A DNA stretch of 64,000 bases, taken from positions 124,001-188,000 of IMG/VR virus record IMGVR_UViG_3300049043_000112. The stretch is one strand, 5' to 3'. Made by a program: the position numbers and the translations under genes. Under the pieces are notes generated by a model. It was not told where the DNA came from and did not search any database. It worked only from the letters and a program-made list of their open reading frames with translations. Positions 16,547 through 55,206 of the stretch are shown piece after piece; the stretch's first letter is position 1; every line of letters starts with the position of its first letter.

Positions 16547-16575
16547 ATTCGCTATTCGCAAATAGAGAATAGCAA

Positions 16576-38118: not shown

Positions 38119-38170
38119 TGTTCTGTTTAAATTCTTATAGAATAACTTAAAAAATTAATTAAGTCAAGTC

Positions 38171-38199
38171 TTGACAGAATGCCAAAACTTGACTAGACT
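38171..38199 (+). promoter_or_regulatory. Sigma70-type promoter in antisense orientation
   Basis: TTGACA-N17-TAGACT on the plus strand, with no plus-strand gene downstream. Confidence 0.65.
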
Positions 38200-38485: not shown

Positions 38486-38513
38486 TGTTTAACTCCTTTT
38501 TGATATTTAGTAA

Positions 38514-39464
38514 TTAACCACCAATTAGGTCAGTGGTGTCATCCGAACTTTCATCAACTGCAGTGACTTCTTCGGTTTCAGTTTCCTCTTGACTTGTTTC
38601 ACCAAGAACTCTCCAGAACTCAGTGTTCTTGCACTTCTCTAGAATTTCTTCGGAAAGAATTTCTTCAGGAGCAGGTGCAGTAGACTTTACAACTGGACGA
38701 ACTTCATGCATATCAGCAAAGCCATAGACCTTACCATCATTTTCACGGTTCTCGTTTTTCAGATTATCAAACGTATGTTCAAAAGGTTCTTCACCTAAGA
38801 ACTCATACAGTTTCTGCATTGTCTCTGCAGGATTGTTTACTAGGTCTTGATACTCTACAAAGTGTAGGGACTGGTCATAACCCTCCATCAGCGCCTTCTG
38901 GAGACCCTCTACGGACTGTCCAAGGATACCTGCGGGGCTTGCTAGCAGTTCGCAGCGATTGTCGTCTGTCAGGGGGATATTGTTCTTAATCAACATCTCA
39001 TCAACAAAGTTGATTTTTCCATCCACCTGATAAGGATTGCGACGAAGCATCGAAATAAACGAAGTCAGGATTTCTGCAGTGTCTCTGACAGGGCAGATAA
39101 CCTTTGGTGCAATATCAAAGTACCCAGGAATATATTCCATACGAACAGTCCAAGAACGGTTCTTATCGAAGATGACAGGTTCTGAACGGTCACCATAATA
39201 CTGTGGCAGAACTGATGCAATGATTTCTTTTGCCTGTTGTGGTTTTGGATAACCAAGGAACAGTTCGTCATTTGCCAGACTATTCTCCAGTGCAATCATT
39301 GTAGGAACGACTGGTGAACTAGGACCAGAATAGAACCTAGGGTTTTGGTTCAGAATAGATGACAGCAGCGTGCTTCCCGAACGTGGAAGTCCTGCCATAA
39401 AGTAGAATGTTTTGTTCAATCTGCTCATCTCTTCACGGATAATTTCTTTAATCATTTCTTTCAT
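38514..39464 (-). CDS. PAPS-dependent sulfotransferase
   Basis: 5'-PSB loop GLPRSGSTLL; DKNR.W; 3'-PB motif VRD..EIL.S; V.YQDLV.NP...M..LYEFLG. Confidence 0.9.
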   Translation of the reverse strand: MKEMIKEIIREEMSRLNKTFYFMAGLPRSGSTLLSSILNQNPRFYSGPSSPVVPTMIALENSLANDELFLGYPKPQQAKEIIASVLPQYYGDRSEPVIFDKNRSWTVRMEYIPGYFDIAPKVICPVRDTAEILTSFISMLRRNPYQVDGKINFVDEMLIKNNIPLTDDNRCELLASPAGILGQSVEGLQKALMEGYDQSLHFVEYQDLVNNPAETMQKLYEFLGEEPFEHTFDNLKNENRENDGKVYGFADMHEVRPVVKSTAPAPEEILSEEILEKCKNTEFWRVLGETSQEETETEEVTAVDESSDDTTDLIGG

Positions 39465-39479
39465 TGGTTTTTAATCCTC

Positions 39480-40391
39480 CTATTGTTTGTCGATGGATGC
39501 AATGATTTTGTCAAAATCATAAAGTTCTTCTTGTTCTCCAAATGGATACTCTACTTCACTTCCGTTGAAATCAAAATCAAAGAAGTAACTACCTGGAAGT
39601 TTAAAGTCATATGGAATTTCAGTGCAGATATTATCGTGCATTGCATAACCAAAAACTTTCGGACTTGTGCCGTTCCAAAGAACTGTAGATGGCAGTCTTA
39701 ATGCTGCAGCTGCGTGTTGTACGCAACTGTCAATTAAAACTCTCTTCTTACTATGTAGTAGAATACTGAACAACTCCATCAGCGATAATGAACTTTCTGG
39801 AGTTGCAAAAATTGGATATGTATCTTCCAGTTTTGGAGAGTTCAGTTTTGTGATTTGGTAAATATGGTATTTGTCTTTATAATGGTCTACAATACGCTGT
39901 GCAAGGTCTTCAGGCATATCCCGTGTCCAGGAATATGGTTTTGCATCAGTCGTCATCATACCGCCATTGGTATGAAGAACCATTATAGGTTTCTTACCTT
40001 TTGCCCATACTTCTCTAGAAATATTCTTCTGGAGATTGTTGAACTTTAATTCTGGTTTTTCGTTATTAAATTTTAAATTGTATAACTTGCACCAATTTTC
40101 AATTAGGGGCAGTTTCTTATGAATGTGTTCTGTGGTATAATATGGTTCGTGATAAAAGATTAAACTATCCTTGTCCCGAACATAGTTCTGATAAAAATAA
40201 CTCGTGTTTCCAAGTTGATATACTCTATCAACAAAAGAAACATTAATGTAAACTTCCGTGTAAACACAGACAACAATTAGTTTTCTATCAGGATAATTAT
40301 TCTTGATACACTTTGCAACAGCAATTGAAGCAATGTGTTTTCCAATTCCACCTTGGACGTGGAATATACAATACTTTGATTTTGAACTCAT
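39480..40391 (-). CDS. GT-B glycosyltransferase, GT9/heptosyltransferase-like
   Basis: N-terminal GGIGKHIA...IK.NYPD; C-terminal LIDSCVQHAAAALRLPSTVLW, matching the GT9 DS..xH.AAA..P.V.L motif. Confidence 0.72.
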   Translation of the reverse strand: MSSKSKYCIFHVQGGIGKHIASIAVAKCIKNNYPDRKLIVVCVYTEVYINVSFVDRVYQLGNTSYFYQNYVRDKDSLIFYHEPYYTTEHIHKKLPLIENWCKLYNLKFNNEKPELKFNNLQKNISREVWAKGKKPIMVLHTNGGMMTTDAKPYSWTRDMPEDLAQRIVDHYKDKYHIYQITKLNSPKLEDTYPIFATPESSLSLMELFSILLHSKKRVLIDSCVQHAAAALRLPSTVLWNGTSPKVFGYAMHDNICTEIPYDFKLPGSYFFDFDFNGSEVEYPFGEQEELYDFDKIIASIDKQ

Positions 40392-40437
40392 AAAAGATAT
40401 CAACTCATTATCTATTATATATCATTTTTACAAAAAG

Positions 40438-41020
40438 TTAAAGCTGGAAAGTAGTCTTGATTTCATCAATCAATTCTTGGTCTTTTGATGCAACACCAAG
40501 ACCATGCGAGCAGGTAAAGTTTGTCTTCGGCAAATCTTAATTCAGCAAAAAACTTATTTACTTCATAACCTGGACGTTCTACAATCGTATCGTGAAATAA
40601 AATCACACCATCATCTTTAACAAACTTATTCCAGGTATCATAATCATTCTTGACTGCCTGATAAGTGTGAAAACCATCAATATGTAGAATATCAATCGGG
40701 TGCTTCCATTGTTTTGCAACCAGTCCAAAATATCCTTTGATAAACTGAATATTGTTCAGTTGTAGTTCTTGTTTCTTTTGCTTGACGTATTCATAGGTAT
40801 TCTTCACACCTGCCATTGCATCACCAGCAAAACTATCAACACCATAAACAGTACCGATTTGTGGAAGTGCAAAACAGAATGTAGAGTAACCATAATCTAC
40901 ACCTAAGTCTACAACGACTTTTGGTTGTTTTCTATTCACTATCCACTGTGCAAATGTAATGTGGTCAGTCCAACCCGTTGGAATTGTTTTAAGTAATTCC
41001 AGTTTATCGTTTAATTCCAT
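40438..41020 (-). CDS. Class I SAM methyltransferase, Methyltransf_24-like (indel near 40535)
   Basis: VVDLGVDYGYST, YGVDSF, IDILHIDGFHTYQAV..DY..W...V...GVILFHD. Confidence 0.88.
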
Positions 41021-41540
41021 AAAAATATAAGTCCTTAATTTTTGTATTGACAGAAAACTTGTACTTGCTAAAGTGTGAAGAGAAATCTACCTTCTCTGTG
41101 AAGTCTTGTTCAGTCAGGTTTTGGTAATAGTCCCATCCCAAATCAATGGTCAGTGGACTATCTTGCACTGATGTTCGTCGTGTTCCGTGCTCTTGTCTTC
41201 CCGTTGTTGCACAGGTGAAGAATACAAGACCGTCTTTCTTGCATAGACGTATCATATTCATAAAGGTTTCATACCAATAAGGGTTATGTTCAAAACATTC
41301 TAAGGAACAAACCACATCATAACTTTCATCAGGTGCGTCATAGTCCTGCCCTTCACAGACGATATCAACATTTTCACCGTATCCAACATCAATTCCAGTG
41401 TAATCACAGTTCTTAAAGTGCTTCTTGACTGAACCATTGATGTCTAAACTTCCAATATCCAATACTTTTTGATTTGCAAAGTAATATTGGTGTTTATTCT
41501 TTAGGTCCATTACAAAGAAGTCTTGTTCAGGATGTGCCAT
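41004..41540 (-). CDS. Class I SAM methyltransferase, Methyltransf_11-like
   Basis: KVLDIGSLDING, YTGIDV..G.NVD, YDVVCSLECFEH; ATG of MAHPEQ at 41540. Confidence 0.88.
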   Translation of the reverse strand: MAHPEQDFFVMDLKNKHQYYFANQKVLDIGSLDINGSVKKHFKNCDYTGIDVGYGENVDIVCEGQDYDAPDESYDVVCSLECFEHNPYWYETFMNMIRLCKKDGLVFFTCATTGRQEHGTRRTSVQDSPLTIDLGWDYYQNLTEQDFTEKVDFSSHFSKYKFSVNTKIKDLYFYGIKR

Positions 41541-41541
41541 A

Positions 41542-42282
41542 TTAATATCCAAAAATGTTTGTTTTAGGTTTTAAAGTGTGCTTAATGATGTCCCATTGCT
41601 TTGCACCTTTAAAATGATTGTATTGATAAGCATTATGAGTATCCAAATCAATTCGTTTTTGTATTGGACCCTTTTTGTTTCCAAGAGTTTTTGAAATTTC
41701 TCCTGTGATTTTATTGGTCTTCAGAGCGTAGATATGTTCACAGTTTTGAATTAAATAATCATCTCCATACCAGACTTTATAAAGACTTGGAATTGGTTTG
41801 TAGACGGAGCGTTTGATGAACATACAGACACCAAACGCATAACTCTGACTACCAATTGGTCTGTTTTTTAGGATGTTCAGTTTGATTAATTCATCCCCTT
41901 CAATTGATTGATGTGCAATATGAAAATTATCAATACTTCCTTTTAAGTATGAACCAATAATATCAATATTTGACATATCTAATGTGGAGATATAATTGAA
42001 AATATCTTCTTCTACAAAAACATCATCATTCAGAATACCAAGTACGTCTGCATTGGAACGATAATATCCTTCGTTCCAAGCAGGATTAACATAAATGTTC
42101 TTATTATAACACACCAATTTAATTTTAGGATGATTTAGAATATCATCCTGTGGTCTATTGGACTTCTGATTATCTACAAGAATAATTGAATTGATTGAAG
42201 AATAATCGCAGTATTGTTTTAAGTATTGAATGAAATTATCAACACACCACATCGTTGGTATGACTATATCAATGCTGTTCAT
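41542..42282 (-). CDS. GT-A (GT2-like) glycosyltransferase
   Basis: IDIVIPT, IILVDN, N.YVNPAWN.G, ILNDD, WYGDD. Confidence 0.85.
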   Translation of the reverse strand: MNSIDIVIPTMWCVDNFIQYLKQYCDYSSINSIILVDNQKSNRPQDDILNHPKIKLVCYNKNIYVNPAWNEGYYRSNADVLGILNDDVFVEEDIFNYISTLDMSNIDIIGSYLKGSIDNFHIAHQSIEGDELIKLNILKNRPIGSQSYAFGVCMFIKRSVYKPIPSLYKVWYGDDYLIQNCEHIYALKTNKITGEISKTLGNKKGPIQKRIDLDTHNAYQYNHFKGAKQWDIIKHTLKPKTNIFGY

Positions 42283-42917
42283 AGGTTATACGACTTCTGA
42301 AAATCTCCTTTAAATTTCTTTGTTCCCATATGTGTCACAGTATGAACTGGATTTAACCAAATCTGATAACCAAGTTCTTTAATCTTTTCACATAAAACAA
42401 TATCTTCTCCGTGGAAGCTGTCGTTAATCACCGTGTACTCGCAGATATACTTTAACTGTCTGCCTCTGAATTCACACACAGGGTTGCTTTCCCATAGGTC
42501 TTTAATCACCTTTTGTGATAACTTTAGAAAACCAGTACCACACCGACCAATCTTTAAGTACCCGTCTGTGTCTGGTTCTTTCTGAACATCATAGACATTA
42601 TACTGGATTTTTTTATCACCTTTATTCACCACTGGAACTGCAACAACGTCTTTGGAAGAGTTGACGATGTTAAGTAATACTGTAGGGTCCCATTCTTCAT
42701 CATCATCAATAAAGACCATTGCATCATAACGTTCCCGATATGCTAGATTAAGCAGTTCATTTCTTGCCATCGGGAGGATGCTTTCATTTGCAAGAAACAC
42801 TGGTTGGAACATTACATTGTTCGCAAGACCAAGTTTTGTGCTTTCATATAATGAATTGACGAACCAAGCATCAACCTTGCCGTCTAAGCACGGGGTTGCA
42901 ATTAATACTCTTTTCAT
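42279..42917 (-). CDS. GT-A fold glycosyltransferase
   Basis: RVLIATP, ES.LPMARN, VFIDDD, GTGFL, GEDI.LC, GY.IWL.P...H.G. Confidence 0.82.
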   Translation of the reverse strand: MKRVLIATPCLDGKVDAWFVNSLYESTKLGLANNVMFQPVFLANESILPMARNELLNLAYRERYDAMVFIDDDEEWDPTVLLNIVNSSKDVVAVPVVNKGDKKIQYNVYDVQKEPDTDGYLKIGRCGTGFLKLSQKVIKDLWESNPVCEFRGRQLKYICEYTVINDSFHGEDIVLCEKIKELGYQIWLNPVHTVTHMGTKKFKGDFQKSYNL

Positions 42918-42935
42918 TTGGACTAATGATGTATT

Positions 42936-45846
42936 TTAAGTATTTAGTTTGTTCTCCAATGCCTCTATTCTTGCCTTAAGGTCTTGGTTTTCTTGGTCTA
43001 GTTCTTTAATCGCATTAACGAGTACTGGTATCATATAGTCGTGAGTGATACCAAGATTATCAGGGTCAGAATTATTAACAATGATTGGTTCATCACCTTC
43101 TAGAGACATTACCTCCTGAGCACTAAATCCATATCTCTTTCTAGGGTCTTTGACTTCACCAGTTTCTTTATCTTTAAAGGAATACTTAATCGGATTGACG
43201 CCTCTTAAGAAGTCACGTCCATAAGGAACTGCACCATAAACACACTTGTATCTAATGTCTGATGCAACACCCCACGCAATTTGGATACAGACCGTGGTAT
43301 GGTTTGCATTACCCATAACAATGCAGTTGGAACCAGTGATGGCGATAAGTCCACTAGGACTTCCACCTGACCCTGCATTAAATCCTATAGCAATATTATT
43401 ACTTCCAGTAACATTAGAAAGACCTGCATTTGTACCTAAGAAAAGATTACAGGCTCCACTGGTAATACACCAACCAGTTGCTTCCCCCATTAATATATTA
43501 TAATTAGCAGTACTATTTCTTCCTGTTTGGTTTCCAATCATAATATTGGAAAGTCCTATGATATTGGAACATCCAGTACCAGGTCCTATGAAAACGTTGT
43601 TGGACCCTGTTGTATTATTAAGTCCTGAATCTCCACCCAAAGAAGTTATTATAAGAACCAGTAGTATTATTGACACCTGTATAATAACCAAACATAACAT
43701 TATGATTTCCTGTGGTGTTGCTACATCCAGTACGATATCCACCAAAGAAGTTATCAGTTCCAATGGTATTAGAACATCCTGCACGACGACCAATGAACGT
43801 ATTAGAACATCCAGTGGTGTTACAACGTCCAGCAAGAGGACCAAAGAAGTTATTATTTACTCCTGTGGTGTTGGATTGTCCTGCAAATCTTCCAAAAAAG
43901 TTGTTGTAATTTCCAGATGTATTGGCACATCCAGCATAACGACCAAAGAAGTTATTATCAATTCCAAAAGTATTAGAATATCCAGCACATTGCCCTATGA
44001 AGTTGTTGTTGTTTCCTGTAGTGTTGCAATAACCAACACGTTTACCAAAAAAGTTGTTATTAGTTCCAGTTGTATTAGAATACCCAGTAAGACGACCTAA
44101 AAAGTTATTGTATTCACCAGTTGTATTTGAATATCCAGAAAGACGACCAAAGAAGTTATTGTATGCACCAAAAGTATTATTATACCCAGCGCATCTTCCT
44201 ATAAAACTATTATTACCTCCTGTGGTGTTGCAGTATCCTGTTTCTGTTCCAAAGAAGTTATTATTACTTCCTGTGGTATTATAACGTCCAGCAAAACATC
44301 CAAAGAAATTATTAGAACTTCCAGTCGTTGTGGAACTACCAGCACCAACACCAGCAAAGAAGTTATTGGTACCACTGGTAATACTTGCACCAGTTGTGGT
44401 ATCACCAATCTTGATATTCGTATCACTAAAACCAATTACACCACCAGAACCAATTCTAACAGTGCTATCAGTAATTCTAAGTCTTTCATTCGCTGCTAAT
44501 GTACCACCAGTGAAGAATGAAAGGGTCTTACCAATTCCAGCAACACCAATACTTAAACTACCATCACTGGTGTATAAGTAAGCATCATTTGCTCCATTGA
44601 TTGTCCAAGTAGACGTTGAAAATCCACTGTTGTTAATTCCTAAGTCTACAAAGTTCGTTGTATCACTACCATTATCTGCAGTTATAACAAGGTCAGCAGA
44701 AGCAGTGTTACCAGTGTTTGCGTTACGAATATTAACTTGAGTATAATTATTCGCAAATGCTGTGAAGTCTGCAACACAGGAAGTCAGTCCAGATAATGCA
44801 GGAGTTCCAGTTGGTGAAACTGTTAGATTATACGTTGGATTTGTAATTCCTATTCCAAAATTACCAGAAACATAAGAACCACCAACGACTTGTAGTGTTT
44901 GATTTGCAGTTCCAGAAGACGTTGCAGTACCGACTAGAAGAGTACCAACATTAACAACATCATTGGTTGTCAGTCCAACGTTACCAGTTCTTCCATAGAA
45001 CCCAGTAACTGCACTGGACGTAGCACCAGCAAAACCAATGTGTCTTACTTGAATTAAACTACCATTTCCAGGTGCTTCAACAAACGTTAGAATGTTTCCA
45101 GTAACACTATATGCTCTAACGTTCGTTGCGTCATTTGGATACTGAACAACACCGTTGATTGTAACTAATACGTTCTGATTGTTTGGTGGTGTTTTGGATA
45201 ATGCAAAGTTTGTTGTGGACCCATCACCAGTGAAACTATCAACGGTGTTGTCACTGGTATCAAACGTTGGATAATTATTTGCAATGACATTACCCCAGAA
45301 GACATCTGTGTTAACTGGAGGTGTTGAAAATACAATGGTGCTGTCTGCATCAATTCCAAAACCATCTGAAGGTGAAGAGGTATCACTTGGTTGTTGGAGA
45401 ACACCATTAATCGAAATCGTTAACTGCGCTGCTCTGGTGACTTGTGCTTTGGTGCCGTTGTTATAAGTCGCTTTGAACTTGGTGTTAATCCCATCAAAAG
45501 CAACGTTGATTGTATGAGTTGCTCCAGTTCCTAATGCTGTAAGAGTAATATATGTACTACTATTTGCGTTTGAAAGAGATGTTGCAAGTTGAATTGTATT
45601 TTGGTCTTGCTTGATAATATAATAATATGTACCCGACGTTAAACCACCAATTGCAGTTCCAGTGGTTGAATAAAGAACTCTCTGACCGGTAATAAAACGG
45701 TGACCAGTTAGAGAAATCGTTGAACCACTTGTAGACACAGAGGCAGAAGAAGACCCATCAAACGTCTGTGTGAACGTTGATATTTGGTCTAAAATCCGGA
45801 AACTGTTGTCTCCTGTTACAGGTTGGTTGCCGATATAGGAAGCCAT
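42936..45846 (-). CDS. Fibre protein A: 14-aa Asn/Gly/Cys repeats plus peptidase S74 chaperone (about 970 aa; indel near 43635)
   Basis: ORFs 43618-45846 and 42936-43844 join; repeats G.NNNFFG..AG..NTT; C-terminal ASDIRYK...YGFSAQEV...PVLVNAIKEL. Confidence 0.85.
42941..42947 (-). promoter_or_regulatory. Late-promoter-like motif upstream of the glycan-modification cluster
   Basis: CTAAATA 23 nt upstream of ATG 42917. Confidence 0.55.
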
Positions 45847-45861
45847 ATATGGTTTTTTAGG

Positions 45862-45869
45862 TATTTATA
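45862..45869 (-). promoter_or_regulatory. T4-type late promoter
   Basis: TATAAATA 15 nt upstream of fibre A. Confidence 0.8.
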
Positions 45870-48800
45870 GACCCGCAGCATCTAAACGAGCACGGATTTC
45901 TTGATTTTCATTTTGAAGAGTTTGTACAGTTTCTTTGAGTTCTGTGTTCTCTTGGTCTAATTCTTTAATCGCATTAACAAGAACTGGTATCATATAATCG
46001 TGAGTGATACCAAGATTATCAGGGTCAGAGTTATTGACGATAATTGGTTCATCACTTTCCAGCGCAAGAACTTCTTGAGCACTGAAACCATATCTCTTTC
46101 TAGGGTCTTTGATTTCTCCAGTTTCCTTGTCCTTAAAGGAGTACTTAATTGGATTTACATTTTTCAGGAAATCTCTGCCGTGTGGTACAGTTCCATAGAC
46201 GCACTTGTATCTGATGTCTGATGCAACACCCCAAGCAATTTGGATGCAAGCTGTTGTGTGGTTTGCATTACCCATAACAATTTGGTTACCAGTGGTGGTG
46301 AAATTGATAAGACCACTTGGAGTTCCACCTGTTGTTCCTGCACGATGTCCAATTGCAATATTGTTGACTGCTGTTGTGTTATTAACTCCCGAAAGACCGC
46401 CGATAAAAACATTACAAGTTCCTGTAGTGTTATTAGAACCAGCACTATCTCCAAAAAATGAATTATAGCATCCAGTTGTAGTTTTGCAACCTGCATCGGC
46501 ACCAAAGAAGTTGTTATTAGTTGCTGTGGTGTTACAACGTCCAGCATTATTACCAAAGAAGTTGTTATTAACACCAATAGTATTTGCAAGTCCTGCATAT
46601 TTTCCAATAAAATTATTAAAGCATCCTGTCGTATTACTAGACCCTGCATAAACTCCAATAAAAACATTGCAAGAAGCAGTGGTATTGCAACGTCCAGCAG
46701 CTTGACCAACAAAAATATTTCTAGTTCCAGTAGTATTTGCACATCCTGCAAGATATCCAAAGAAGTTATTATAACATCCAGTGGTATTGCAAAATCCTGC
46801 AAGATTACCAAAGAAATTATTAAGTCTACCAGTAGTATTAGAATATCCAGCACATTGCCCTATGAAGTTATTGTTGTCTCCTGTGGTGTTTGAGTATCCT
46901 GCATAACGACCGAAGAAATTATTATTGGACCCTGTGGTATTTTTCCACCCAGAACGATATGCAAGAAAAAGATTATTATTTCCAAAAGTGTTACAAAATC
47001 CTGCTTGATATCCTATAAAAGTGTTGCAAGTTCCAGTAGTACTACTATATCCAGCACTATCACCTATAATAATATTTCCGCTTCCTGTAGTATTAGATTT
47101 ACCTGCTTCACGACCAATAAAAGTATTATAACCACCAAAAGTATTAGAACATCCCGCGATGTTACCTATGAAGGTGTTGTTGTTTCCTGTGGTGTTTGAT
47201 TGTCCTGCTTGCAATCCAAAGAAGTTATTATGAGTTCCTGTAGTGTTGCTTCTACCTGCATAATAACCAAAGAAGTTATTATGAGTTCCAGTGGTATTAC
47301 ACCATCCAGATTGAGCACCAAAGAAGTTATTATAACATCCTGTTGTATTAGCGCATCCTGCACCATACCCAATAAAGTTATTATATCTACCAAACGTATT
47401 AACACGTCCCGATATTTGACCTATAAAATTATTATTGTTTCCTGTGGTATTACAACAACCTGCAAGAGAACCAAAGAAGTTATTGTTTGACCCAGTGGTG
47501 TTATTTTGCCCTGCACGTAATCCAATAAAGTTATTATATCCACCAAAAGTATTAGAACATCCAGCACGATTACCTATGAAATTGTTATTATTTCCTGTGG
47601 TGTTTGAGTATCCTGCAGCATATCCGCCAAAGAAATTAAAAATACCAAAAGTATTGGAATATCCAGCACATTGCCCTATGAAGTTGTTGTTGGACCCTGT
47701 GGTGTTTTGATTACCTGCACTTAATCCAATAAAGTTATTATGATTTCCTGTAGTATTAACACATCCAGCACCAAGTCCAAAGAAGTTATTATGGCATCCA
47801 GTAGTATTATTACGCCCCGCATTAGCACCAAAGAAGTTATTATAACATCCAGTAGTGTTATATTTTCCTGCTCCAGTTCCAGAGAAATTATTAAAGTTTC
47901 CAAAAGTATTAGAATATCCAGCACATCTTCCTATGAAGTTGTTGTTGTTTCCTGTGGTATTCGAGTACCCTGCTTGATATCCACCAAAGAAGTTATTAGA
48001 CCCTGTGGTGTTGCTTCTGCCTGCAGCATAACCACCAAAGAAATTATGACTTCCTGTAGTATTAAAACGTCCTGCATAAAAACCAAAGAAATTATTACAA
48101 CTTCCCGTGGTATTTTCTTGTCCAGCACGACCACCAATAAAGTTATTAAAACCTCCTGTAGTATTACAACATCCAGCATTAACACCAAAGAAATTATTAT
48201 AGCAACCAGTAGTGTTAAACCTTCCTGCACTAAGACCAAAGAAGTTATTAAAAAATCCAGTAGTATTACACCATCCAGCACCACATCCAAAGAAATTATT
48301 ATGACATCCAAAAGTATTAGAATATCCAGCACATTGCCCTATGAAGTTGTTGTTGGAACCGGTGGTGTTATAATATCCCGTAAGTTCTCCAAAAAAGTTA
48401 TTGTCTGTACCAATAGTATTAAAATATCCAGCACATTTTCCTATAAAGTTGTTATCGTTTCCTGTGGTGTTGCAACGACCTGCATTAAATCCTAAGAAGT
48501 TGTTAAAAGACCCTGTAGTATTTTCACGTCCTGCAGTATTTCCTAAAAAGTTATTATGACATCCTCCAGTATTGCACTGTCCAGCATTTAAACCAATAAA
48601 ATTATTTCTAGAACCAGAAACATTATTTTGTCCAGCATAAGCACCAATAAAGTTATTAAATATTCCTATTGTATTGCAACGTCCAGCATAAGCACCAATA
48701 AAGTTATTAAAACAACCAGTTGTAACATTTGCACCGGTGAAACTATTACCAATGCTGATATTCGTGTCATTAAACCCAATGGTTCCACCGACTTGTAACT

Positions 48801-49161
48801 TAACCAGTGGATTTGTGGTTCCTATACCGACAGAACCAGAAACATAAGCACCACCAACAACCTGTAAGTCTTGATTGGCAGTATTAGTACTTGAACCCGT
48901 ACCAATCAATACAGGTCCATTCACGAATGTACCTACACCAGTAACTTGTAGGTCTGCAAAAGTATTAGGACCAACTGATATAACACTCTCTATGGTCGCT
49001 GCAGTAACGGCATCAAGAGAAGCAATGTTTTGAAGTTCTCTGGCACCTGAAACAACTTGTGTCGAACCAACACTTAACGCAGAGATTGTGGTAACACCTG
49101 ATAAAGAAATACCAGTTGCTATACCAAGACTTGTAATCTGAGTGAGACCTTCAAGTGCCAT
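45865..49161 (-). CDS. Fibre protein B: roughly 55-60 14-aa repeats plus peptidase S74 chaperone
   Basis: Intact 1098-aa ORF; S74 domain nearly identical to that of fibre A. Confidence 0.9.
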   Translation of the reverse strand: MALEGLTQITSLGIATGISLSGVTTISALSVGSTQVVSGARELQNIASLDAVTAATIESVISVGPNTFADLQVTGVGTFVNGPVLIGTGSSTNTANQDLQVVGGAYVSGSVGIGTTNPLVKLQVGGTIGFNDTNISIGNSFTGANVTTGCFNNFIGAYAGRCNTIGIFNNFIGAYAGQNNVSGSRNNFIGLNAGQCNTGGCHNNFLGNTAGRENTTGSFNNFLGFNAGRCNTTGNDNNFIGKCAGYFNTIGTDNNFFGELTGYYNTTGSNNNFIGQCAGYSNTFGCHNNFFGCGAGWCNTTGFFNNFFGLSAGRFNTTGCYNNFFGVNAGCCNTTGGFNNFIGGRAGQENTTGSCNNFFGFYAGRFNTTGSHNFFGGYAAGRSNTTGSNNFFGGYQAGYSNTTGNNNNFIGRCAGYSNTFGNFNNFSGTGAGKYNTTGCYNNFFGANAGRNNTTGCHNNFFGLGAGCVNTTGNHNNFIGLSAGNQNTTGSNNNFIGQCAGYSNTFGIFNFFGGYAAGYSNTTGNNNNFIGNRAGCSNTFGGYNNFIGLRAGQNNTTGSNNNFFGSLAGCCNTTGNNNNFIGQISGRVNTFGRYNNFIGYGAGCANTTGCYNNFFGAQSGWCNTTGTHNNFFGYYAGRSNTTGTHNNFFGLQAGQSNTTGNNNTFIGNIAGCSNTFGGYNTFIGREAGKSNTTGSGNIIIGDSAGYSSTTGTCNTFIGYQAGFCNTFGNNNLFLAYRSGWKNTTGSNNNFFGRYAGYSNTTGDNNNFIGQCAGYSNTTGRLNNFFGNLAGFCNTTGCYNNFFGYLAGCANTTGTRNIFVGQAAGRCNTTASCNVFIGVYAGSSNTTGCFNNFIGKYAGLANTIGVNNNFFGNNAGRCNTTATNNNFFGADAGCKTTTGCYNSFFGDSAGSNNTTGTCNVFIGGLSGVNNTTAVNNIAIGHRAGTTGGTPSGLINFTTTGNQIVMGNANHTTACIQIAWGVASDIRYKCVYGTVPHGRDFLKNVNPIKYSFKDKETGEIKDPRKRYGFSAQEVLALESDEPIIVNNSDPDNLGITHDYMIPVLVNAIKELDQENTELKETVQTLQNENQEIRARLDAAGL

Positions 49162-49175
49162 TTTTGTTTTTTAAG

Positions 49176-49183
49176 TATTTATA
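49176..49183 (-). promoter_or_regulatory. T4-type late promoter
   Basis: TATAAATA 14 nt upstream of fibre B. Confidence 0.8.
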
Positions 49184-49194
49184 GACGTGTTCTT

Positions 49195-52100
49195 TCAGTT
49201 TATTTTATTTTCTAAAGCTTCAATTCTGCTTCTTAAGTCTTGGTTTTCTTGTTTGACTTCTGTGAGTTCAGTGTCGAGTTCTTTGATTGCATTAATCAAG
49301 TACCAAGTTAGATTAGAAGTATCAACACTATAAACACCAGTGCTTTCTTGCTTAACAATTTCTGGTAATACTTCTAGTGCCTCTTGAGCGATTAGACCAA
49401 TTTGTACTCCTTCTTTGTTGATTGCAGTGTGCTCTGGAAGTTCAGTAATTTCTTCTGGTTTTCTATATTCGAAATTACGAACTCGGAATGCATTAATGAT
49501 TTCTAAACCAACAGTGTTATCTACAATGTTCTTTTTAATTCTTTCATCTGATGTAGTAGACCAAGTGGAACTATTATTACCTTGATAAATTCCACCACCA
49601 CCAGCATTGATAAAACCGGTTTGTGATCCCTTGCCCACTATCCAAGCGCCATTATGAGCAGCGATAACCATTTCACAATTCACACCTGTACCCGAAGCAC
49701 AAGATGCATAACCTATAAAAGTATTACCCTGTCCTGTTGAGGCAACCTGACCTGCTTGAAATCCTAAGAAAGTATTTTGAGCTCCAGTGGTAAGGTTTTG
49801 ACCCGCTTGAGCACCTAAAAAGACATTATTACTTCCAGCGGTAAGGGAATATCCAGCATTACATCCTAAAGCTGTATTGCAAGTTCCAACTGTATTGTAA
49901 CGTCCCGCATTACATCCTAAAAAGACATTATGAGATCCACATGTGTTTGTAACTCCTGCTTCTCTACCAATAAAAACGTTATGAGTTCCAACAGTATTGC
50001 TAAATCCTGCAGCATAACCAATAAAGACATTGCAAGTACCTGTAGTATTTCTTTCTCCAGCAGAAGTTCCAAAAAATATATTATAAGATCCAGTGGTATT
50101 ACAACGTCCAGCATTCTGTCCCATAAAGGCGTTGTTAGATCCTGTGGTGTTGTTAAGTCCAGCAAGAAAACCGAAGAAAGTGTTGTGGTTTCCTGTGGTA
50201 TTTGCACATCCTGCACGACATCCAAAGAAGTTATTGCTGTTTCCAGTGGTGTTGCAAAGCCCTGCAAGATATCCAAAGAAATTGTTGTAACATCCAGTGG
50301 TATTATAACGTCCTGCCTGAGAACCCATAAAGACATTATAGGAACCATAACTATTGCATTGACCTGCTCTTCTTCCTATAAAAGTATTATGACTTCCAGT
50401 GGAATTAAAGCATCCTGCATAGAAACCAAAGAAGTTGTTGTTGCCTCCTGTAGTGTTAGATTGTCCTGCACTCTGTCCAATAAAGTTATTATTTGCACCA
50501 AAAGTATTAGCGTATCCAGCACATTGCCCTATGAAGTTGTTGTTGTTTCCTGTGGTGTTTGAGTATCCAGTATAACGACCGAAGAAATTATTATTAGACC
50601 CTGTGGTATTTAATTGTCCTGCACGTACTCCAAAGAAGTTATTGCAACCTCCTGTGGTCGTGAAATATCCAGCATATTTTCCAAAGTAATTATTATAAGC
50701 ACCAGTGGTGTTAGCAAGACCAGCAGCTCTACCTAAGAAGTTATTATATGCACCAAAGGTATTGCATCTACCTGCACTACTTCCAATAAAGTTATTAAAT
50801 GAACCAGTCGTATTACACCATCCTGTAAGAGGACCAATGAAATTATTATTATCACCAAAAGTATTAGCAAATCCAGAACATTGCCCTATGAAGGTGTTGT
50901 TGGACCCTGTGGTGTTTGAGTATCCAGTATTAAATCCAAAGAAGTTATTATTACTACCAAAAGTATTAGCGTATCCAGCAAAAACACCAATAAAATTATT
51001 ACTATTTCCAGTAGTATTGAGCCAACCTGTACCACGACCAAAGAAGGTATTATAAGAACCAGTGGTGTTACAGTATCCGGCAAAACATCCAAAAAAGTTA
51101 TTAGCAATTCCAGTCAGATTATAACGACCTGCAGCATAACCTATAAATTGATTATATCTACCAAAACTATTTGTTGTTCCTGTTAAAGCTCCGATAAAAG
51201 TATTAAAACCTCCTGTAGTATTAGAACGTCCAGCAGCCCATCCTAAGAAAGTATTATAGTTTCCAAAAGTATTATTACATCCTGCCCTATCACCAATAAA
51301 AATATTTCCATTTCCAGTTGTATTTTTATACCCACCTAAACAACCAGCAAAGAAATTACACCCACCAAAAGTATTAAACTGACCGGCAGCGTATCCAATA
51401 AAAGTATTATGATTTCCAGTGGTGTTGCAATATCCACTAGTGTACCCAAAGAAGTTGTTATGACATCCTGTAGTATTATTAATTCCAGCAAGAGGACCAA
51501 AGAAGTTATTGCAATTTCCAGTAGTATTACATCTACCTGCGGAAGAACCAAAGAAATTATTGGAAGTCCCTGTAGTGTTACAATACCCAGCAAGAGGACC
51601 AAAGAAGTTATTGTTTCCACCAAAAGTATTAGAAAATCCAGCACATTGCCCTATAAAAATATTATCGCTTCCTGTTGTGTTTGAATATCCAGCATTAACA
51701 CCAAAAAAGTTGTTAGTATATCCAGTAGTATTGCTATAACCTGCTTGATATCCAAAGAAGTTATTATTACTTCCCGATGTATTTGCAATTCCAGAAAAAC
51801 GACCTAAGAAGTTATTATAAGCACCAAAAGTATTAGAATATCCAGCACATTGCCCTATGAAGTTGTTGTTGTTTCCTGTGGTGTTACTTGCACCTGCTTG
51901 ATATCCACCGAAGAAATTAAAACTTCCAGTAGTATTACATACACCTGCAACACGACCAAAGAAGTTGTTATGACATCCAAAAGTATTAGCAAATCCAGCA
52001 GAAGAACCAATAAAATTATTACAACCTCCAGTGGTGTTATTACATCCTGAACGTTCACCAATAAAAATATTGCAACAACCAAAAGTATTACAAAATCCAG

Positions 52101-54878
52101 AACATCTTCCTATAAAGACATTATCGTTTCCTGTAGTATTACTTCTACCAGAACTTATACCAAAGAAGTTATTATTTGACCCTGTAGTATTATAACGTCC
52201 TGCAGCAAGACCAAAGAAGTTATTATAATTTCCAGTGGTATTACAACGACCTGCAAAACGACCAATGAAGTTATTATAACCACCAAAAGTATTAGCAAAT
52301 CCCGCACAGGTACCTATAAATGTGTTGTAGTTTCCTGTAGTATTACAACGTCCTGCCTGGTTTCCAAAGAAATTATTGTTACAACCAGTTGTATTTTCTC
52401 TTCCAGCATTAACTCCTAAGAAATTATTAGAACTACCAGTAGTAGTTTTATAACCACCATAACGTCCAAAGAAGTTATTATAACACCCAGTGGTGCTAAA
52501 ATACCCAGCAAATTGCCCTAAGAAATTATTACAAGAACCAAAAGTATTGCAATAACCAGCCCAGAACCAATAAAATTATTATTACTTCCTGTGGTATTAT
52601 AACGTCCTGCACCAGAACCAAAGAAGTTATTGTATCCTCCAAAAGTATTGCATAGTCCTGCAGATACTCCTATAAAGTTATTACGAACGCCTGTTGTATT
52701 GCAGAAACCAGCACGTAATCCTAAGAAATTATTATATTGTCCAAAAGTATTAGAAAATCCAGCACATTGCCCTATGAAGTTGTTGTTGTTTCCTGTGGTG
52801 TTGTTTCTACCAGCAGAAGAACCAAAGAAGTTATTGTTGCTTCCAGTGGTATTACAAAGTCCAGAATTAAGACCAAAGAAATTATTATATGAACCTGTAG
52901 TATTATACCTACCTGCACTACGACCCATCAAATTATTAAAACATCCTGTAGTATTACGATATCCAGCAGAGCATCCTATAAAATTGTTACTACTACCAAA
53001 AGTGTTGATACATCCAGCACATTGCCCTATAAAAGTGTTGTAGTTTCCTGTGGTGTTGCAGAAACCTGCAAAGTATCCAAAGAAATTATTAGATTGTCCA
53101 AAAGTATTAAAATACCCAGCACATTGCCCTATGAAGGTGTTGTTGGACCCTGTGGTGTTTGAGTAACCACCAGCAAATCCAATAAAGTTATTATAATTAC
53201 CAAAAGTATTTCTGTATCCTGCAGATACACCTATAAAGTTATTAGCATTTCCAGTTGTATTTAATTGCCCTGCAAACGCTCCAAAGAAGTTGTTGTATTT
53301 TCCTGTCGTATTAGAATATCCAGCACATTGCCCTATAAAAATATTATTGGTTCCTGTAGTATTTTGATTTCCTGCAGCACTTCCGATGAAATTATTATTA
53401 CAACCAATAGTATTAAAACGTCCAGCACCTCTTCCTATAAAGTTGTTATTAGACCCTGTGGTGTTGTTTCTACCTGCATAGAAACCAAAGAAGTTATTAT
53501 AGCAACCAGTAGTATTAGAACATCCAGCAAATATACCAAAGAAGTTGTTATAAGTACCAAAGGTATTAGAAAATCCAGCACATTGCCCTATGAAGGTGTT
53601 GTGGTTTCCTGTGGTGTTGCAAAATCCAGCACGTGATCCAAAGAAATTATTGCAACTTCCATAAACATTAGAAAAACCTGCATAACGACCTATAAAATTA
53701 TTATCATTTCCAGTAGTATTTTGACATCCAGCACCACGCCCAAAGAAATTATTACCAAATCCAGTGGTATTAAGAACTCCTGTAGCAACACCAAAGAAGT
53801 TATTAAAACAACCTGTAGTATTACATAATCCTGAACTTTGTCCAAAAAAGTTATTATAAGAACCAAAAGTATTATTTGCTCCAGCATTGGAACCTATAAA
53901 GGTGTTGTGGTTTCCTGTGGTGTTACAACGACCTGCATTAAACCCGAAGAAGTTATTATTTCCACCAAAAGTATTAGAATATCCAGCACATCTTCCTATG
54001 AAGTTGTTGTTGTTTCCTGTGGTATTAAATCTTCCACTGTAAGCACCAAAGAAGTTATTATAAGAACCACTAATATTACATAAACCAGCAGTTGTACTTA
54101 AAAAGATATTTCCATTTCCAATGGAATTATTTTTCCCTGCGTTTAAACCTATAAAAATATTTCTAATTCCAATTGTATTATAATATCCAGCACAGGTTCC
54201 TATGAAGGTGTTATCAGTTCCTGTGGTGTTACAAAATCCTGCACTAAATCCAAAGAAGTTATTAAAACAACCAGAAGTATTAAAAGCACCAGCACTATTT
54301 CCTACAAAGAAATTACTACATCCAAATGTATTACAAACTCCAGCGGTACGACCAATAAAAGTATTATTAGACCCAGTAGTATTTGCTTGTCCAGCACCAC
54401 TTCCTATAAAGACATTACGGGTTCCAGTGGTATTACATTGTCCAGCATTTTGTCCAATAAAAGTATTATAAACTCCAATTGTATTAGAATATCCAGCACA
54501 TTGTCCTATAAAAATATTATGATTACCAGTCGTTGTGGAACTACCAGCACCAACACCAGCAAAGAAGTTATTTTGCCCACCACTTAAACTACTTCCAGTT
54601 GTGGTATCACCAATTCTTATATTCGCTGTAGAACCAAAAGATACCTGAGTAAACGTAGAAACACCAGTGATATTCAGGTCTGCAAACGTGTTAGGACCAG
54701 TTGATATAGCACTTTCAATTGTTGCCGCTGTTGTAGCGTCTAGCGACGTAATGTTTTGAAGTTGTCTTGCAGAACTGATAACTTGTGTTGAACCAATGGA
54801 TAAGGTTCTTACGCTTGTAATACCAACACTAAAATTATCGTCTTGTACGTTATCTCCGCTAATTCTAGTTAGTGGCAT
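49195..54878 (-). CDS. Fibre protein C: more than 100 14-aa repeats plus peptidase S74 chaperone (about 1890 aa; indel near 52561)
   Basis: ORF 52518-54878 shifts near 52561 into the same frame as ORF 49195-50328; C-terminal STTSDERIKKNI...GLIAQE...YLINAIKEL. Confidence 0.85.
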
Positions 54879-54879: not shown

Positions 54880-55206
54880 TCAGGTCATCTCCAGAATTGA
54901 TAAACTTGCGTCTAAACTTGAATTTGTATCACTAATTGCAGTAATGCTATCATTCGCTTCCATAATAATTTTGTTCCCCTGCATTACTTCTAATGAGGAA
55001 CCTTGTGGAATTGGAACATTCTTAACTAAACTTACACTATCAGAACTCGTTCTTGAAATTCCAACCGTGACATTAATACTTCCACCAGAAATATTTGCTA
55101 ATGTCAGACCAATCACTGTGGTCATAGTAGCAGATGGAACTGTATAAATTCCAACGGTCGTAACACCGATGTTTGTTTTTGTGCGTAGCTTGAAAACGTT
55201 CGCCAT
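54880..55206 (-). CDS. Small beta-rich virion protein
   Basis: MANVFK...IYTVPSA.TTVIGLTLAN...LVKNVPIP.GSSL...KIIME..D...SILEMT; resembles 63045-63386. Confidence 0.8.
   Translation of the reverse strand: MANVFKLRTKTNIGVTTVGIYTVPSATMTTVIGLTLANISGGSINVTVGISRTSSDSVSLVKNVPIPQGSSLEVMQGNKIIMEANDSITAISDTNSSLDASLSILEMT

What the first reader, a model, noticed from the sequence alone, without database searches (positions are those of the whole stretch)
38514..54878. Candidate virion glycosylation island: six modifying enzymes directly downstream of sequon-packed fibres
Seen: two GT-A glycosyltransferases, two SAM methyltransferases, a GT9-like GT-B enzyme and a PAPS sulfotransferase form a tightly packed unit (gaps of 0-50 nt). 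It begins 18 nt after fibre A and has a late-type CTAAATA. Most of the 14-aa fibre repeats contain N-T-T, an N-X-S/T sequon, and the Thr-rich fibres at 55-63 kb are dense in NLT/NYT/NYS/NST. Established: cytoplasmic enzymes glycosylate repetitive beta-helical adhesins (HMW1C on N-X-S/T; the GT9-like AAH/TibC heptosyltransferases on Ser/Thr). Inference: the phage may build a methylated, sulfated glycan on its own fibres for shielding, adhesion or charge, rather than remodelling host LPS. Caveat: no HMW1C-like enzyme is recognisable here.
Basis: inference. Interest (0 to 1): 0.75.

Follow-up and report, generated by a model that had tools for sequence, protein, structure and literature searches.

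The report
Tail-fibre-linked sugar-modifying gene cassette
A large freshwater cyanophage carries six soluble sugar-building and sugar-decorating enzymes immediately after its repeat-rich tail-fibre genes; they may coat the phage's own fibres with a modified sugar, but remodelling of the host surface is nearly as likely, and the "N-glycosylation sequon" argument does not hold.

Summary
The six enzymes exist, at 38514-42917 on the minus strand, 18 nt after the last of three repeat fibres. In order they are a small viral-type GT-A, a GT2-like GT-A, two SAM methyltransferases, a GT9-like GT-B and a PAPS sulfotransferase.

- The fibre repeat is 17 aa, not 14.
- NTT is part of the repeat's structural consensus. 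Related fibres of phages without the enzyme keep it equally well, and no GT41/HMW1C enzyme is in the genome.
- The record has single-base indel errors. One truncates a methyltransferase. Two fibre frame breaks at G-runs are probably errors too.

New findings:
- The four-gene core (GT-A, GT2, GT9-like, sulfotransferase) is conserved at 60-96% identity. In most T4-like relatives it lies between the last fibre gene and neck gene gp13.
- Unrelated 32-kb pelagiphages (HTVC111P-type) pair a 17-aa-repeat fibre with a GT9-like gene directly behind it, in 63 of 68 loci.
- The genome encodes ADP-heptose synthesis in a second, larger glycan island.

- Several relatives drive the cassette from perfect sigma70-type (early) promoters.
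- The GT9-like fold is closer to LPS heptosyltransferases than to Aah/TibC.

Verdict: a real fibre-linked glycan cassette. Fibre glycosylation is about 0.4, host-surface remodelling about 0.3.

The parts
55288..55295 (-). TATAAATA late-type promoter motif ahead of p108 and fibre C
   Evidence: Genome-wide, 20 of 26 TATAAATA sites lie within 45 nt upstream of an ATG-ORF.
54880..55206 (-). 108-aa ORF (phrog_1276) just upstream of fibre C. It is a paralogue of the 113-aa ORF at 63045-63386.
49198..54878 (-). Fibre C. It has about 70 17-aa repeats and a C-terminal Peptidase_S74 chaperone domain. It reads in two frames with a break at the G-run 52560-52562, where a fourth G would restore the repeat.
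49176..49183 (-). TATAAATA late-type promoter motif, 14 nt before the fibre B ATG
45865..49161 (-). Fibre B, intact, 1098 aa. The repeat consensus is NNFIGxxAGxxNTTGxx with period 17, and it has a C-terminal Peptidase_S74 domain.
45862..45869 (-). TATAAATA late-type promoter motif, 15 nt before the fibre A ATG
42939..45846 (-). Fibre A. It has a non-repeat N-terminal part, then 17-aa repeats, then an S74 domain. The frame break lies at the G-run 43636-43638. Independent contigs end at 43626 and 43636, so this break is unresolved.
42941..42947 (-). CTAAATA motif inside the last codons of fibre A, 23 nt before the ATG of the first enzyme gene
   Evidence: Genome-wide, 17 of 32 CTAAATA sites precede an ORF start, against 13 of 73 for TTAAATA. 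The motif is conserved in L001, L003 and L033.
42279..42917 (-). GTA_212: a small phage-type GT-A glycosyltransferase with an invariant DDD (D71-D73). It is the most conserved gene of the cassette.
41542..42282 (-). GT2_246: a GT2-like GT-A glycosyltransferase. In relatives it is fused to a Methyltransf_24 domain.
41004..41552 (-). MT23_182: class I SAM methyltransferase (Methyltransf_23/11; phrog_32762). It was not matched (tblastn, E <= 1e-5) in any related locus compared.
40466..41020 (-). MT24: Methyltransf_24 SAM methyltransferase. The record has an extra base near 40537, so the last ~25 residues of the 184-aa ORF are out of frame. The intact orthologue is 191 aa.
39480..40403 (-). GTB_307: GT9-like GT-B glycosyltransferase and putative heptosyltransferase. 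It carries the D225-S226...H230-AAAAL motif.
38514..39464 (-). ST_316: PAPS-dependent sulfotransferase with a PAPS-binding loop at residues ~20-62
38227..38484 (-). Small ORF that follows the sulfotransferase in relatives as an intact 85-95 aa protein. Here it is split by the record's extra base at 38401. CTAAATA lies at 38504-38510.
38162..38194 (-). Terminator-like hairpin (15 pairs) that ends the fibre-cassette transcription unit
37881..37909 (-). Perfect sigma70-type promoter (TTGACA-17-TATAAT) that opens the next, early-type unit. A second one lies at 37647-37676.

Best explanation
The region is the distal end of the tail-fibre operon of a 236-kb T4-like freshwater cyanomyovirus. Three trimeric fibres are built from 17-aa repeats and end in self-cleaving S74 chaperone domains. 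A cassette of six soluble cytoplasmic enzymes follows them.

Proposed mechanism (steps inferred, none shown):
1. The enzymes assemble a short hetero-oligosaccharide.
2. The two GT-A enzymes add the first sugars.
3. The GT9-like GT-B adds a heptose from ADP-heptose. The phage can make this donor with its own split HldE, encoded elsewhere in the genome.
4. The two SAM methyltransferases O-methylate sugars. One of them is fused to the GT2 in relatives.
5. The sulfotransferase adds sulfate from PAPS.

Most likely acceptor: the phage's own fibres, modified in the cytoplasm before or during assembly. Linkage would be to Ser/Thr or other surface residues, in the manner of autotransporter heptosylation and of chlorovirus, STIV and mycobacteriophage virion glycosylation. 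It would not be HMW1C-type N-glycosylation at the NTT motif. The result would be charged, methyl-capped glycans on the fibre shaft that alter adhesion, shielding or stability.
For: - Families and folds.
- All six enzymes lack membrane-span-like segments.
- The cassette lies inside the fibre transcription unit. Late-type motifs precede fibres A and B and the p108 ORF just upstream of fibre C, and CTAAATA precedes the cassette. The scan lists no terminator-like hairpin in the 18-nt gap between fibre A and the cassette. A hairpin and two perfect sigma70 promoters come only after it.
- The core GTA-GT2-GT9-like-ST order is conserved at 60-96% identity. A 17-aa-repeat, S74-ended fibre lies within 2 kb upstream in 13 of 16 distinct loci. 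The usual position is between the last fibre gene and gp13.
- L011's record, which has another fibre type next to the cassette, still has a repeat fibre about 17 kb upstream.
- Independent lineage: in HTVC111P and HTVC112P a 17-aa-repeat fibre (NTAIGxxALxxNTTGxx) abuts a GT9-like gene, sharing one base. The GT9-like protein is 26% identical, with profile E 3e-41.
- That adjacency holds in 63 of 68 IMG/VR loci while fibre length varies from 340 to 1992 aa.
- Other viral GT9-like genes also sit right after large ORFs; two of those resemble fibres by C-terminal sequence, judged by eye and not tested.
- The best solved-structure match of GTA_212 is the viral enzyme STIV A197. Protein O-glycosyltransferases follow: COLGALT1, LH3, ppGalNAc-Ts and Mimivirus R699.
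- GT-methyltransferase fusions occur in relatives.
- The phage encodes RfaE domain I and II homologues.
- Precedent cited in the literature read: virion glycosylation in mycobacteriophages.
- Precedent read directly: a prediction that sulfotransferase operons modify co-encoded tail-collar proteins.
Against: - There is no direct evidence of any glycan on any fibre.
- NTT is structural, not a maintained sequon.
- Repeat fibres exist without the enzyme.
- The cassette also sits next to non-repeat fibres with no extra enzyme divergence.
- In L008, L011 and L014 (perfect) and L006, L030 and L012 (near-perfect), a sigma70-type early promoter precedes the cassette.
- The GT9-like fold ranks nearer to LPS heptosyltransferases than to Aah or BimC. 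It also lacks their size and conserved cysteines.
- GT-A structural matches are promiscuous.
- The end of a fibre module is a common landing site for accessory genes.
- The genome's second island looks like the 'LPS clusters' of P-SSM2-type cyanophages.
- The complex prediction of GT9-like enzyme plus fibre fragment gave no answer.
Confidence: 0.4

Rival explanations
1. Host-surface remodelling. The enzymes act on lipid-linked or nascent host envelope glycans such as LPS O-chain, exopolysaccharide or S-layer glycan. They add heptose, methyl and sulfate groups. The changed surface would block superinfection, or would stop progeny fibres from being trapped on debris. The gene position next to the fibres would then reflect co-evolution of receptor binding and receptor masking, or simply an accessory-gene hot spot.
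For: - The GT9-like model's nearest reviewed neighbours are LPS/LOS heptosyltransferases.
- Perfect sigma70-type promoters precede the cassette in L008, L011 and L014, and near-perfect ones in L006, L030 and L012.
- The same genome has a second island with GT25, three GT11, GT10, Gmd/Fcl-like enzymes and HldE, typical of O-antigen clusters.
- In AG-345-L05 and S-SRM01 the homologues lie in larger sugar islands.
- A bacterial member of the GT9-like family sits next to a GT4 gene.
- The literature reads such phage glycosyltransferases as host LPS modifiers.
- The sulfotransferase weakly resembles the Nod-factor sulfotransferase NoeE.
Against: - No membrane, flippase, polymerase or GtrA/B-type component is in the cassette.
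- In this phage the cassette has late-type signals and lies inside the fibre operon, which leaves little time to rebuild a surface.
- A 32-kb pelagiphage keeps only the GT9-like gene, abutting its fibre gene.
Confidence: 0.3
2. One reading: HMW1C-like N-glycosylation of the N-T-T sequons, followed by glycan extension.
For: 63-70% of the 17-aa units carry N-x-S/T at the same position. The control cyanobacterium genome has GT41-family genes, so a host enzyme could in principle prime the sites.
Against: - No GT41 gene is in the phage genome.
- NTT is equally conserved in fibres of phages without the enzymes.
- 30-37% of units have NTF or NTI with no sign of selection.
- The sequon excess over composition is small.
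- The invariant Asn and Gly fit a structural turn of a beta-solenoid. This is my inference from the hexapeptide-like pattern.
Confidence: 0.06
3. Direct protein or small-molecule tailoring. The sulfotransferase and methyltransferases act on amino-acid side chains of fibres (Tyr, or hydroxylated residues) or on a glycolipid or metabolite. They would not act on a fibre-borne glycan. The glycosyltransferases would serve a separate product.
For: - The sulfotransferase's best solved-sequence matches are tyrosylprotein sulfotransferases, though only over the PAPS loop. CurM ST matches over the full length.
- 2OG-Fe(II) oxygenases lie beside the cassette in L011 and L027.
- Iyer et al. 2010 predicted hydroxylation followed by sulfation of tail-collar and collagen-like proteins.
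Against: GT2-methyltransferase and GT9-like-FkbM fusions tie methylation to sugar transfer. The four-gene order is conserved as a unit.
Confidence: 0.12

Closest known systems
Autotransporter heptosyltransferases Aah/TibC (BAHT family, GT9-like) with AIDA-I/TibA
   Same: A GT9-type GT-B enzyme is encoded next to a long beta-solenoid adhesin built of short imperfect repeats rich in Asn, Thr and Gly. Both are cytoplasmic and soluble. TibC is among the PDB fold matches.
   Different: The phage enzyme is 307 aa, against about 400. Its family has no conserved four-Cys iron finger. Its fold ranks nearer to WaaC, WaaF and WaaQ than to Aah or BimC. The partner is a phage fibre with an S74 chaperone domain, not a secreted autotransporter. 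No glycan has been shown.
LPS-core heptosyltransferases WaaC/WaaF/WaaQ (CAZy GT9)
   Same: These are the best structural and profile matches, and they share the C-terminal D-S-x-x-x-H-x-A-A-A motif. The phage encodes the ADP-heptose pathway enzyme HldE.
   Different: The window protein is below the Pfam cut-off (13.8 bits) and about 11-14% identical. The family is fused to FkbM methyltransferase or GT25 domains in relatives. In viruses it sits next to fibre genes.
Virus-encoded virion glycosylation (chlorovirus PBCV-1 capsid glycans; STIV A197; mycobacteriophage Che8/Corndog, Freeman 2023; Mimivirus fibrils)
   Same: - Soluble viral GT-A enzymes are encoded beside structural genes.
- GTA_212's best PDB match is STIV A197. 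BFVD matches include PBCV-1, Megavirus and Che8 glycosyltransferases.
- Methyltransferases are coupled to glycosyltransferases.
- The virus encodes Gmd/Fcl-like sugar-nucleotide enzymes. The PBCV-1 parallel for these is from my own knowledge.
   Different: The supposed target would be tail fibres, not capsid or tail tube. A sulfotransferase and a GT9-like enzyme are added. There is no biochemical evidence here.
'LPS / cell-wall synthesis and modification' gene clusters of large cyanomyoviruses and pelagimyophages (P-SSM2, S-SCSM1, S-SCSM2R; host recognition cluster)
   Same: Glycosyltransferases and nucleotide-sugar enzymes lie in the hypervariable fibre region. The second island of this genome is of exactly this type.
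   Different: The six-gene cassette is a distinct, conserved four-gene core with a fixed order, abutting a fibre gene. A minimal form of the pairing, fibre plus GT9-like gene, recurs in 32-kb pelagiphages.

Membership tests
CAZy GT9 / Pfam PF01075 heptosyltransferases | GT-B fold that matches solved GT9 enzymes | tested here: met
   The AF2 model has pLDDT 94.7. The top PDB hits are 3tov, 1psw (WaaF), WaaC and TibC, with E 4e-11 to 1e-6. Swiss-Prot ranks 1-13 and 15-17 are LPS/LOS heptosyltransferases or related GT9 enzymes.
CAZy GT9 / Pfam PF01075 heptosyltransferases | Sequence match to PF01075 above the gathering score | tested here: not met
   The window protein scores 13.8 bits against a cut-off of 22 and has no hit. 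However, 12 of 80 family members match PF01075, best E 6.5e-9. The family profile hits WaaF at the DSxxxHxAAA motif with E 0.04.
CAZy GT9 / Pfam PF01075 heptosyltransferases | Uses ADP-heptose as donor | not testable with these tools
   Indirect support only: the genome encodes RfaE domain I (E 3e-31) and domain II (E 5e-35) homologues, both below the equivalog cut-offs.
Autotransporter heptosyltransferases (BAHT: Aah, TibC, BimC) | About 400 aa with a Cys-coordinated iron finger and a dodecamer-forming insert | tested here: not met
   The protein is 307 aa. No Cys is among the invariant or near-invariant columns of the 80-sequence family. Oligomeric state was not tested.
Autotransporter heptosyltransferases (BAHT: Aah, TibC, BimC) | Closest structural kin are BAHT enzymes rather than LPS heptosyltransferases | tested here: not met
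   BimC ranks 19 and Aah ranks 22 with TM about 0.5. They fall below 16 LPS/LOS-type GT9 enzymes with TM 0.54-0.64.
Autotransporter heptosyltransferases (BAHT: Aah, TibC, BimC) | Encoded next to its repeat beta-solenoid substrate | tested here: inconclusive
   Adjacency to 17-aa-repeat fibres holds in two unrelated phage lineages. Whether the fibre is a substrate is unknown.
HMW1C-type N-glycosyltransferase system (GT41) | A GT41 enzyme is present | tested here: not met
   PF13844 has no match in the 236-kb genome at E <= 0.1. None of the six enzymes has a GT41 hit.
HMW1C-type N-glycosylation system (GT41) | Sequons kept as acceptor sites | tested here: not met
   NTT is kept equally in fibres of phages that lack the enzymes. 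The excess over composition is small.
PAPS-dependent sulfotransferases (PF13469 / PF00685) | Pfam match above cut-off that includes the PAPS-binding loop | tested here: met
   60.4 bits (cut-off 27) and 47.4 bits (cut-off 22). Residues 20-62 align to the TPST and CurM PAPS loop. The acceptor class (sugar, Tyr or other) was not resolved.
Class I SAM methyltransferases | Pfam match above cut-off | tested here: met
   Methyltransf_24 scores 68.8 bits against 26.3. Methyltransf_23 scores 33.3 against 27. The C-terminus of the first is out of frame in the record.
GT-A fold glycosyltransferases (GT2-like) | GT-A fold with a DxD motif | tested here: met
   GTA_212: the model has pLDDT 94.1, invariant D71 and D73 with D72 nearly invariant, and its PDB matches are dominated by GT-A glycosyltransferases. 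GT2_246: only a sub-threshold PF00535 hit (19.4 against 23.3 bits), and its structure was not modelled.
Phage virion glycosylation (mycobacteriophage type) | Glycan demonstrated on virion proteins | not testable with these tools
   This needs glycoproteomics or glycostaining of virions.
Cyanophage LPS / cell-surface modification cluster | Altered host surface glycan during infection | not testable with these tools
   Only gene content is comparable.

The most novel reading that the evidence does not exclude
Two abundant and unrelated groups of aquatic phages decorate their 17-aa-repeat beta-solenoid tail fibres with heptose, using a dedicated short GT9-like enzyme. These are T4-like cyanomyoviruses and HTVC111P-type pelagiphages. 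It would be a phage counterpart of autotransporter heptosylation. In cyanophages the sugar would be extended, O-methylated and sulfated by the rest of the cassette. Tail-fibre glycosylation would then be a widespread, unrecognised determinant of adsorption in lakes and oceans.
Probability: 0.3. Interest if true: 0.8.

Novelty: new variant of a known kind. Interest (0 to 1): 0.6.

Why it matters
Glycosyltransferase islands in cyanophage and pelagiphage fibre regions have been noted since the first genomes. They are routinely read as host-LPS modifiers, without any test.

This analysis isolates a conserved four-gene core with a fixed order that abuts a fibre gene. It also finds a minimal two-gene form, repeat fibre plus GT9-like enzyme, in cultured 32-kb pelagiphages. 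That turns an open question into a simple experiment: mass spectrometry of one fibre, or co-expression of two genes in E. coli, which makes ADP-heptose.

If the fibres are glycosylated, this would extend virion glycosylation from mycobacteriophage capsids to the receptor-binding organelles of some of the most abundant viruses on Earth. Sulfation would add a new chemistry.

If they are not, the cassette becomes a defined handle on phage remodelling of cyanobacterial surfaces.

Tried and rejected
- Complex prediction of GT9-like enzyme plus a 136-aa fibre fragment: no answer, not evidence either way.
- The search for related loci with the 80-sequence GT9-like alignment failed for lack of a conserved stretch.
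- Two mid-distance family members found no viral loci.
- Four distant family members lay on contigs too short for context.
- PDB sequence searches for GTB_307 and GTA_212 as single sequences, and for GT2_246 and MT23, were uninformative.
- I considered arguing that cyanobacteria lack GT9 and heptose, so the enzyme could not be an LPS enzyme. The control genome of Synechococcus elongatus matches PF01075 above cut-off, so I dropped the argument.
- I rejected sequon enrichment as evidence.
- I rejected programmed frameshifting in the fibres. Both breaks are +/-1 at G-runs and there is no slippery heptamer. The same record has three proven indel errors, and close relatives have intact fibres.
- CTAAATA is not over-represented in the window: 9 sites against 16.5 expected. 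Only its position ahead of ORF starts is informative.

Full report
CONTEXT

The window is bases 124001-188000 of a 236,016-bp IMG/VR virus record judged complete. Gene content marks it as a T4-like cyanomyovirus: gp32-like SSB, PhoH, ThyX, baseplate hub, tail tube and T4-type fibres. psbA and psbD lie just beyond the window; I recognised them from their N-termini.

The nearest isolate by DNA is the freshwater Synechococcus phage S-SRM01. The only run that holds 91% of the region's words is a lake-water metagenome.

All genes discussed are on the minus strand.

ANATOMY

Read 5' to 3' on the minus strand:
- A 1669-aa Thr-rich fibre, 60223-55214.
- A 108-aa ORF.
- Fibre C, 54878-49198.
- Fibre B, 49161-45865, 1098 aa.
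- Fibre A, 45846-42939.
- After 18 nt, six enzyme genes running from 42917 to 38514.

Fibres A, B and C end in a Peptidase_S74 intramolecular chaperone domain. They are built from a repeat whose autocorrelation peaks at 17, 34 and 51 residues, not 14. The consensus is NNF[FI]GxxAGxxNTTGxx.

RECORD QUALITY

Fibres A and C are each split into two frames at a run of G. I laid independent contigs from four metagenome runs on 38300-44200. In every run, including the one that holds this same strain letter for letter, the record has one base too many at 38401 and near 40537. It also lacks a T after 38496 relative to that same-strain run and to a minority of contigs in two other runs.
- The extra base at 38401 splits a small ORF that follows the sulfotransferase in relatives as an intact 85-95 aa protein.
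- The extra base near 40537 puts the last ~25 residues of the Methyltransf_24 gene out of frame. The orthologue in L001 is 191 aa.

The contigs stop at 43626 and 43636, beside the fibre A break, so that break is unresolved. Close relatives have uninterrupted fibres of 1288-1886 aa. I therefore treat both fibre breaks as probable record errors, not as pseudogenes or programmed frameshifts.

THE ENZYMES

- ST_316 is a PAPS sulfotransferase by Pfam, well above cut-off. It has a weak NoeE resemblance. It matches tyrosylprotein sulfotransferases only over the PAPS loop. Its acceptor class is open.
- The two methyltransferases are class I SAM enzymes.
- GTB_307 has no Pfam hit of its own. It belongs to a large family with 653 representatives. 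12 of 80 sampled members hit PF01075, and the family profile finds WaaF at the DSxxxHxAAA motif.
- The GTB_307 AF2 model (pLDDT 94.7) matches only GT9 enzymes at the top of PDB. In Swiss-Prot, LPS/LOS heptosyltransferases and related GT9 enzymes fill ranks 1-13 and 15-17. BimC and Aah are at ranks 19 and 22 with lower TM. It is GT9-like, but it is not a member of the autotransporter heptosyltransferase family.
- GTA_212 belongs to a phage-only family related to Anp1/GT2 and has an invariant DDD motif. Its model (pLDDT 94.1) is closest to the viral enzyme STIV A197. Collagen and mucin-type protein O-glycosyltransferases and Mimivirus R699 come next. BFVD matches include PBCV-1, Megavirus and Che8 enzymes.
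- GT2_246 is a weak GT2 match.
- None of the six has a membrane-span-like segment.

FUNCTIONAL COUPLING WITHIN THE CASSETTE

In relatives the GT2 is fused to the Methyltransf_24 domain, in proteins of 430 aa (L012) and 450 aa (L014). GT9-like family members are fused to FkbM methyltransferase or GT25 domains. The methyltransferases are therefore sugar-tailoring partners of the transferases.

Many relatives carry an APS-kinase-like gene just after the sulfotransferase. This genome has none.

The genome has a second, larger sugar island at 196-212 kb, beside psbA and psbD. It holds:
- GT25, three GT11, GT10, and GT7C-like and GT1-like transferases.
- Gmd/Fcl-like dehydratases.
- FkbM and Methyltransf_23 methyltransferases.
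- Adjacent RfaE domain I and domain II homologues, that is, ADP-heptose synthesis.

This supplies a donor for the GT9-like enzyme. It also shows that the six genes are part of a much larger glycan capacity.

TRANSCRIPTION SIGNALS

TATAAATA sits 14-15 nt ahead of fibres A and B, and also ahead of the 108-aa ORF. Genome-wide, 20 of 26 such sites precede an ORF start.

CTAAATA, 23 nt ahead of GTA_212, is not enriched in number. However, 17 of 32 sites precede ORF starts, against 13 of 73 for TTAAATA and 6 of 46 for GTAAATA.

A 15-pair hairpin and two perfect TTGACA-17-TATAAT promoters follow the cassette. In this phage the cassette therefore looks like the tail of a late fibre operon.

Relatives differ:
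- L001, L003 and L033 keep CTAAATA.
- L025 and L027 have ATAAATA.
- L032 has TATAAATA.
- L008, L011 and L014 have perfect sigma70-type promoters directly upstream of the first enzyme gene. L006, L030 and L012 have near-perfect ones.
- L031 has a hairpin with a T-run there.

Timing is therefore not a conserved property. That removes much of the 'late, hence virion' argument.

CO-OCCURRENCE

The order GTA-GT2-(methyltransferases)-GT9-like-ST is kept at 60-96% identity in every related locus long enough to show all four genes. In most of the more distant relatives it lies between the last fibre gene and neck gene gp13. In this phage and its closest relatives, early-type genes follow the cassette instead.

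In 13 of 16 distinct loci with enough upstream DNA, a 17-aa-repeat, S74-ended fibre lies within 2 kb. L009, L011 and L014 have another large ORF there. L011's record nevertheless has a repeat fibre about 17 kb upstream.

These loci are kin, so this is largely conserved synteny.

The informative case is independent. The 32-kb Pelagibacter phages HTVC111P and HTVC112P have a fibre with the same 17-aa architecture (NTAIGxxALxxNTTGxx, S74 end). A GT9-like gene follows it directly, sharing one base with it. The enzyme is 26% identical, with profile E 3e-41. In IMG/VR, 63 of 68 loci of that lineage keep the pairing while the fibre varies from 340 to 1992 aa.

Other viral GT9-like genes also follow large ORFs that lack the repeat; two of those resemble fibres by C-terminal sequence, which I judged by eye and did not test.

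Conversely, repeat fibres in Roseobacter phages CRP-1 and CRP-7, Methylophilales phage Venkman and vir515 come with no GT9-like gene.

THE SEQUON ARGUMENT

Units with N-x-S/T at the fixed position make up 63-70% in this phage and 80-86% in the pelagiphages. They make up 50-100% in the four phages without the enzyme. NTT is therefore part of the fold's consensus.

The sequon excess over composition is small. No GT41 gene is present.

WEIGHING

What the cassette is can be stated with high confidence: a soluble unit that builds and tailors a glycan, linked to fibre genes.

What it acts on is inference.
- For the fibres: the recurrent, independent fibre/GT9-like pairing, the absence of any export or membrane component, the viral and protein-O-glycosyltransferase flavour of GTA_212, and the precedents.
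- For the host surface: the LPS-type fold of the GT9-like enzyme, early-type promoters in relatives, the O-antigen-like second island, and the fact that fibre-module ends collect accessory genes.

The remainder is unassigned.

LITERATURE

Papers on pelagimyophages and cyanomyoviruses describe glycosyltransferases in the fibre ('host recognition') region and assign them to host LPS modification or DNA glucosylation. The paper on the HTVC111P-type phages only labels the gene 'GTF'. Iyer et al. 2010 predicted that sulfotransferase operons modify co-encoded tail-collar proteins. My searches of the held library found no report of tail-fibre glycosylation in these phages.

Noticed in passing
window 38401, 38496, ~40537; 43636-43638; 52560-52562: The record has single-base indel errors, proven by independent contigs at the first three places. 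There are two further frame breaks at G-runs in fibres A and C. Gene calls on this record will be fragmented.
   Followed up: partly
L133 (genome 196001-215000, outside the window): A second, larger glycan island lies beside psbA and psbD. It holds GT25, three GT11, GT10, GT7C-like and GT1-like transferases, Gmd/Fcl-like dehydratases, FkbM and Methyltransf_23 methyltransferases, and split HldE (RfaE domains I and II).
   Followed up: partly
L034 453-839 and L035 240-647 (HTVC112P gp46, HTVC111P gp50): A HlyC-type toxin-activating lysine acyltransferase gene sits directly before the large tail protein gene in both pelagiphages. This hints at acylation of a tail protein.
   Followed up: no
L006 11216-12052; L011 11261-12118; L031 15059-15916: Relatives carry a 278-285 aa protein just after the sulfotransferase. 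It has an APS-kinase-like N-terminus and a faint cytidylyltransferase-like C-terminus, so it may supply PAPS. The window's genome has none.
   Followed up: partly
window 54880-55206 and 63045-63386: Two small paralogous ORFs (phrog_1276, 108 and 113 aa) each lie immediately upstream of a large fibre gene. They may be fibre adaptors or chaperones.
   Followed up: no
window 37647-37676 and 37881-37909: Two perfect TTGACA-N17/18-TATAAT promoters follow the cassette's terminator-like hairpins. They mark a sharp late-to-early boundary.
   Followed up: partly
window 16350-16667: A cluster of three tRNA genes on the minus strand: Leu-TAA, Met-CAT and Ile-TAT.
   Followed up: no
window 10541-15238 and 15021-15971: Two large minus-strand ORFs overlap by about 220 nt. 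This may be another frame break in a single giant structural gene.
   Followed up: no
L012 4517-7105: The opposite-strand frames of this relative's 862-aa fibre gene read as Gly-Pro-X triplets around 4450-5352. This hints at a collagen-like or otherwise triplet-periodic stretch in the fibre ahead of the 17-aa repeats. The fibre's own frame was not examined.
   Followed up: no
L134 (AG-345-L05, 100000-135000): In this marine Kyanoviridae relative, the same slot between the repeat fibres and the p80/thyX genes holds a ~16-kb island. It has two sulfotransferase copies, a GTA-like gene and the GT9-like gene in a different order.
   Followed up: partly
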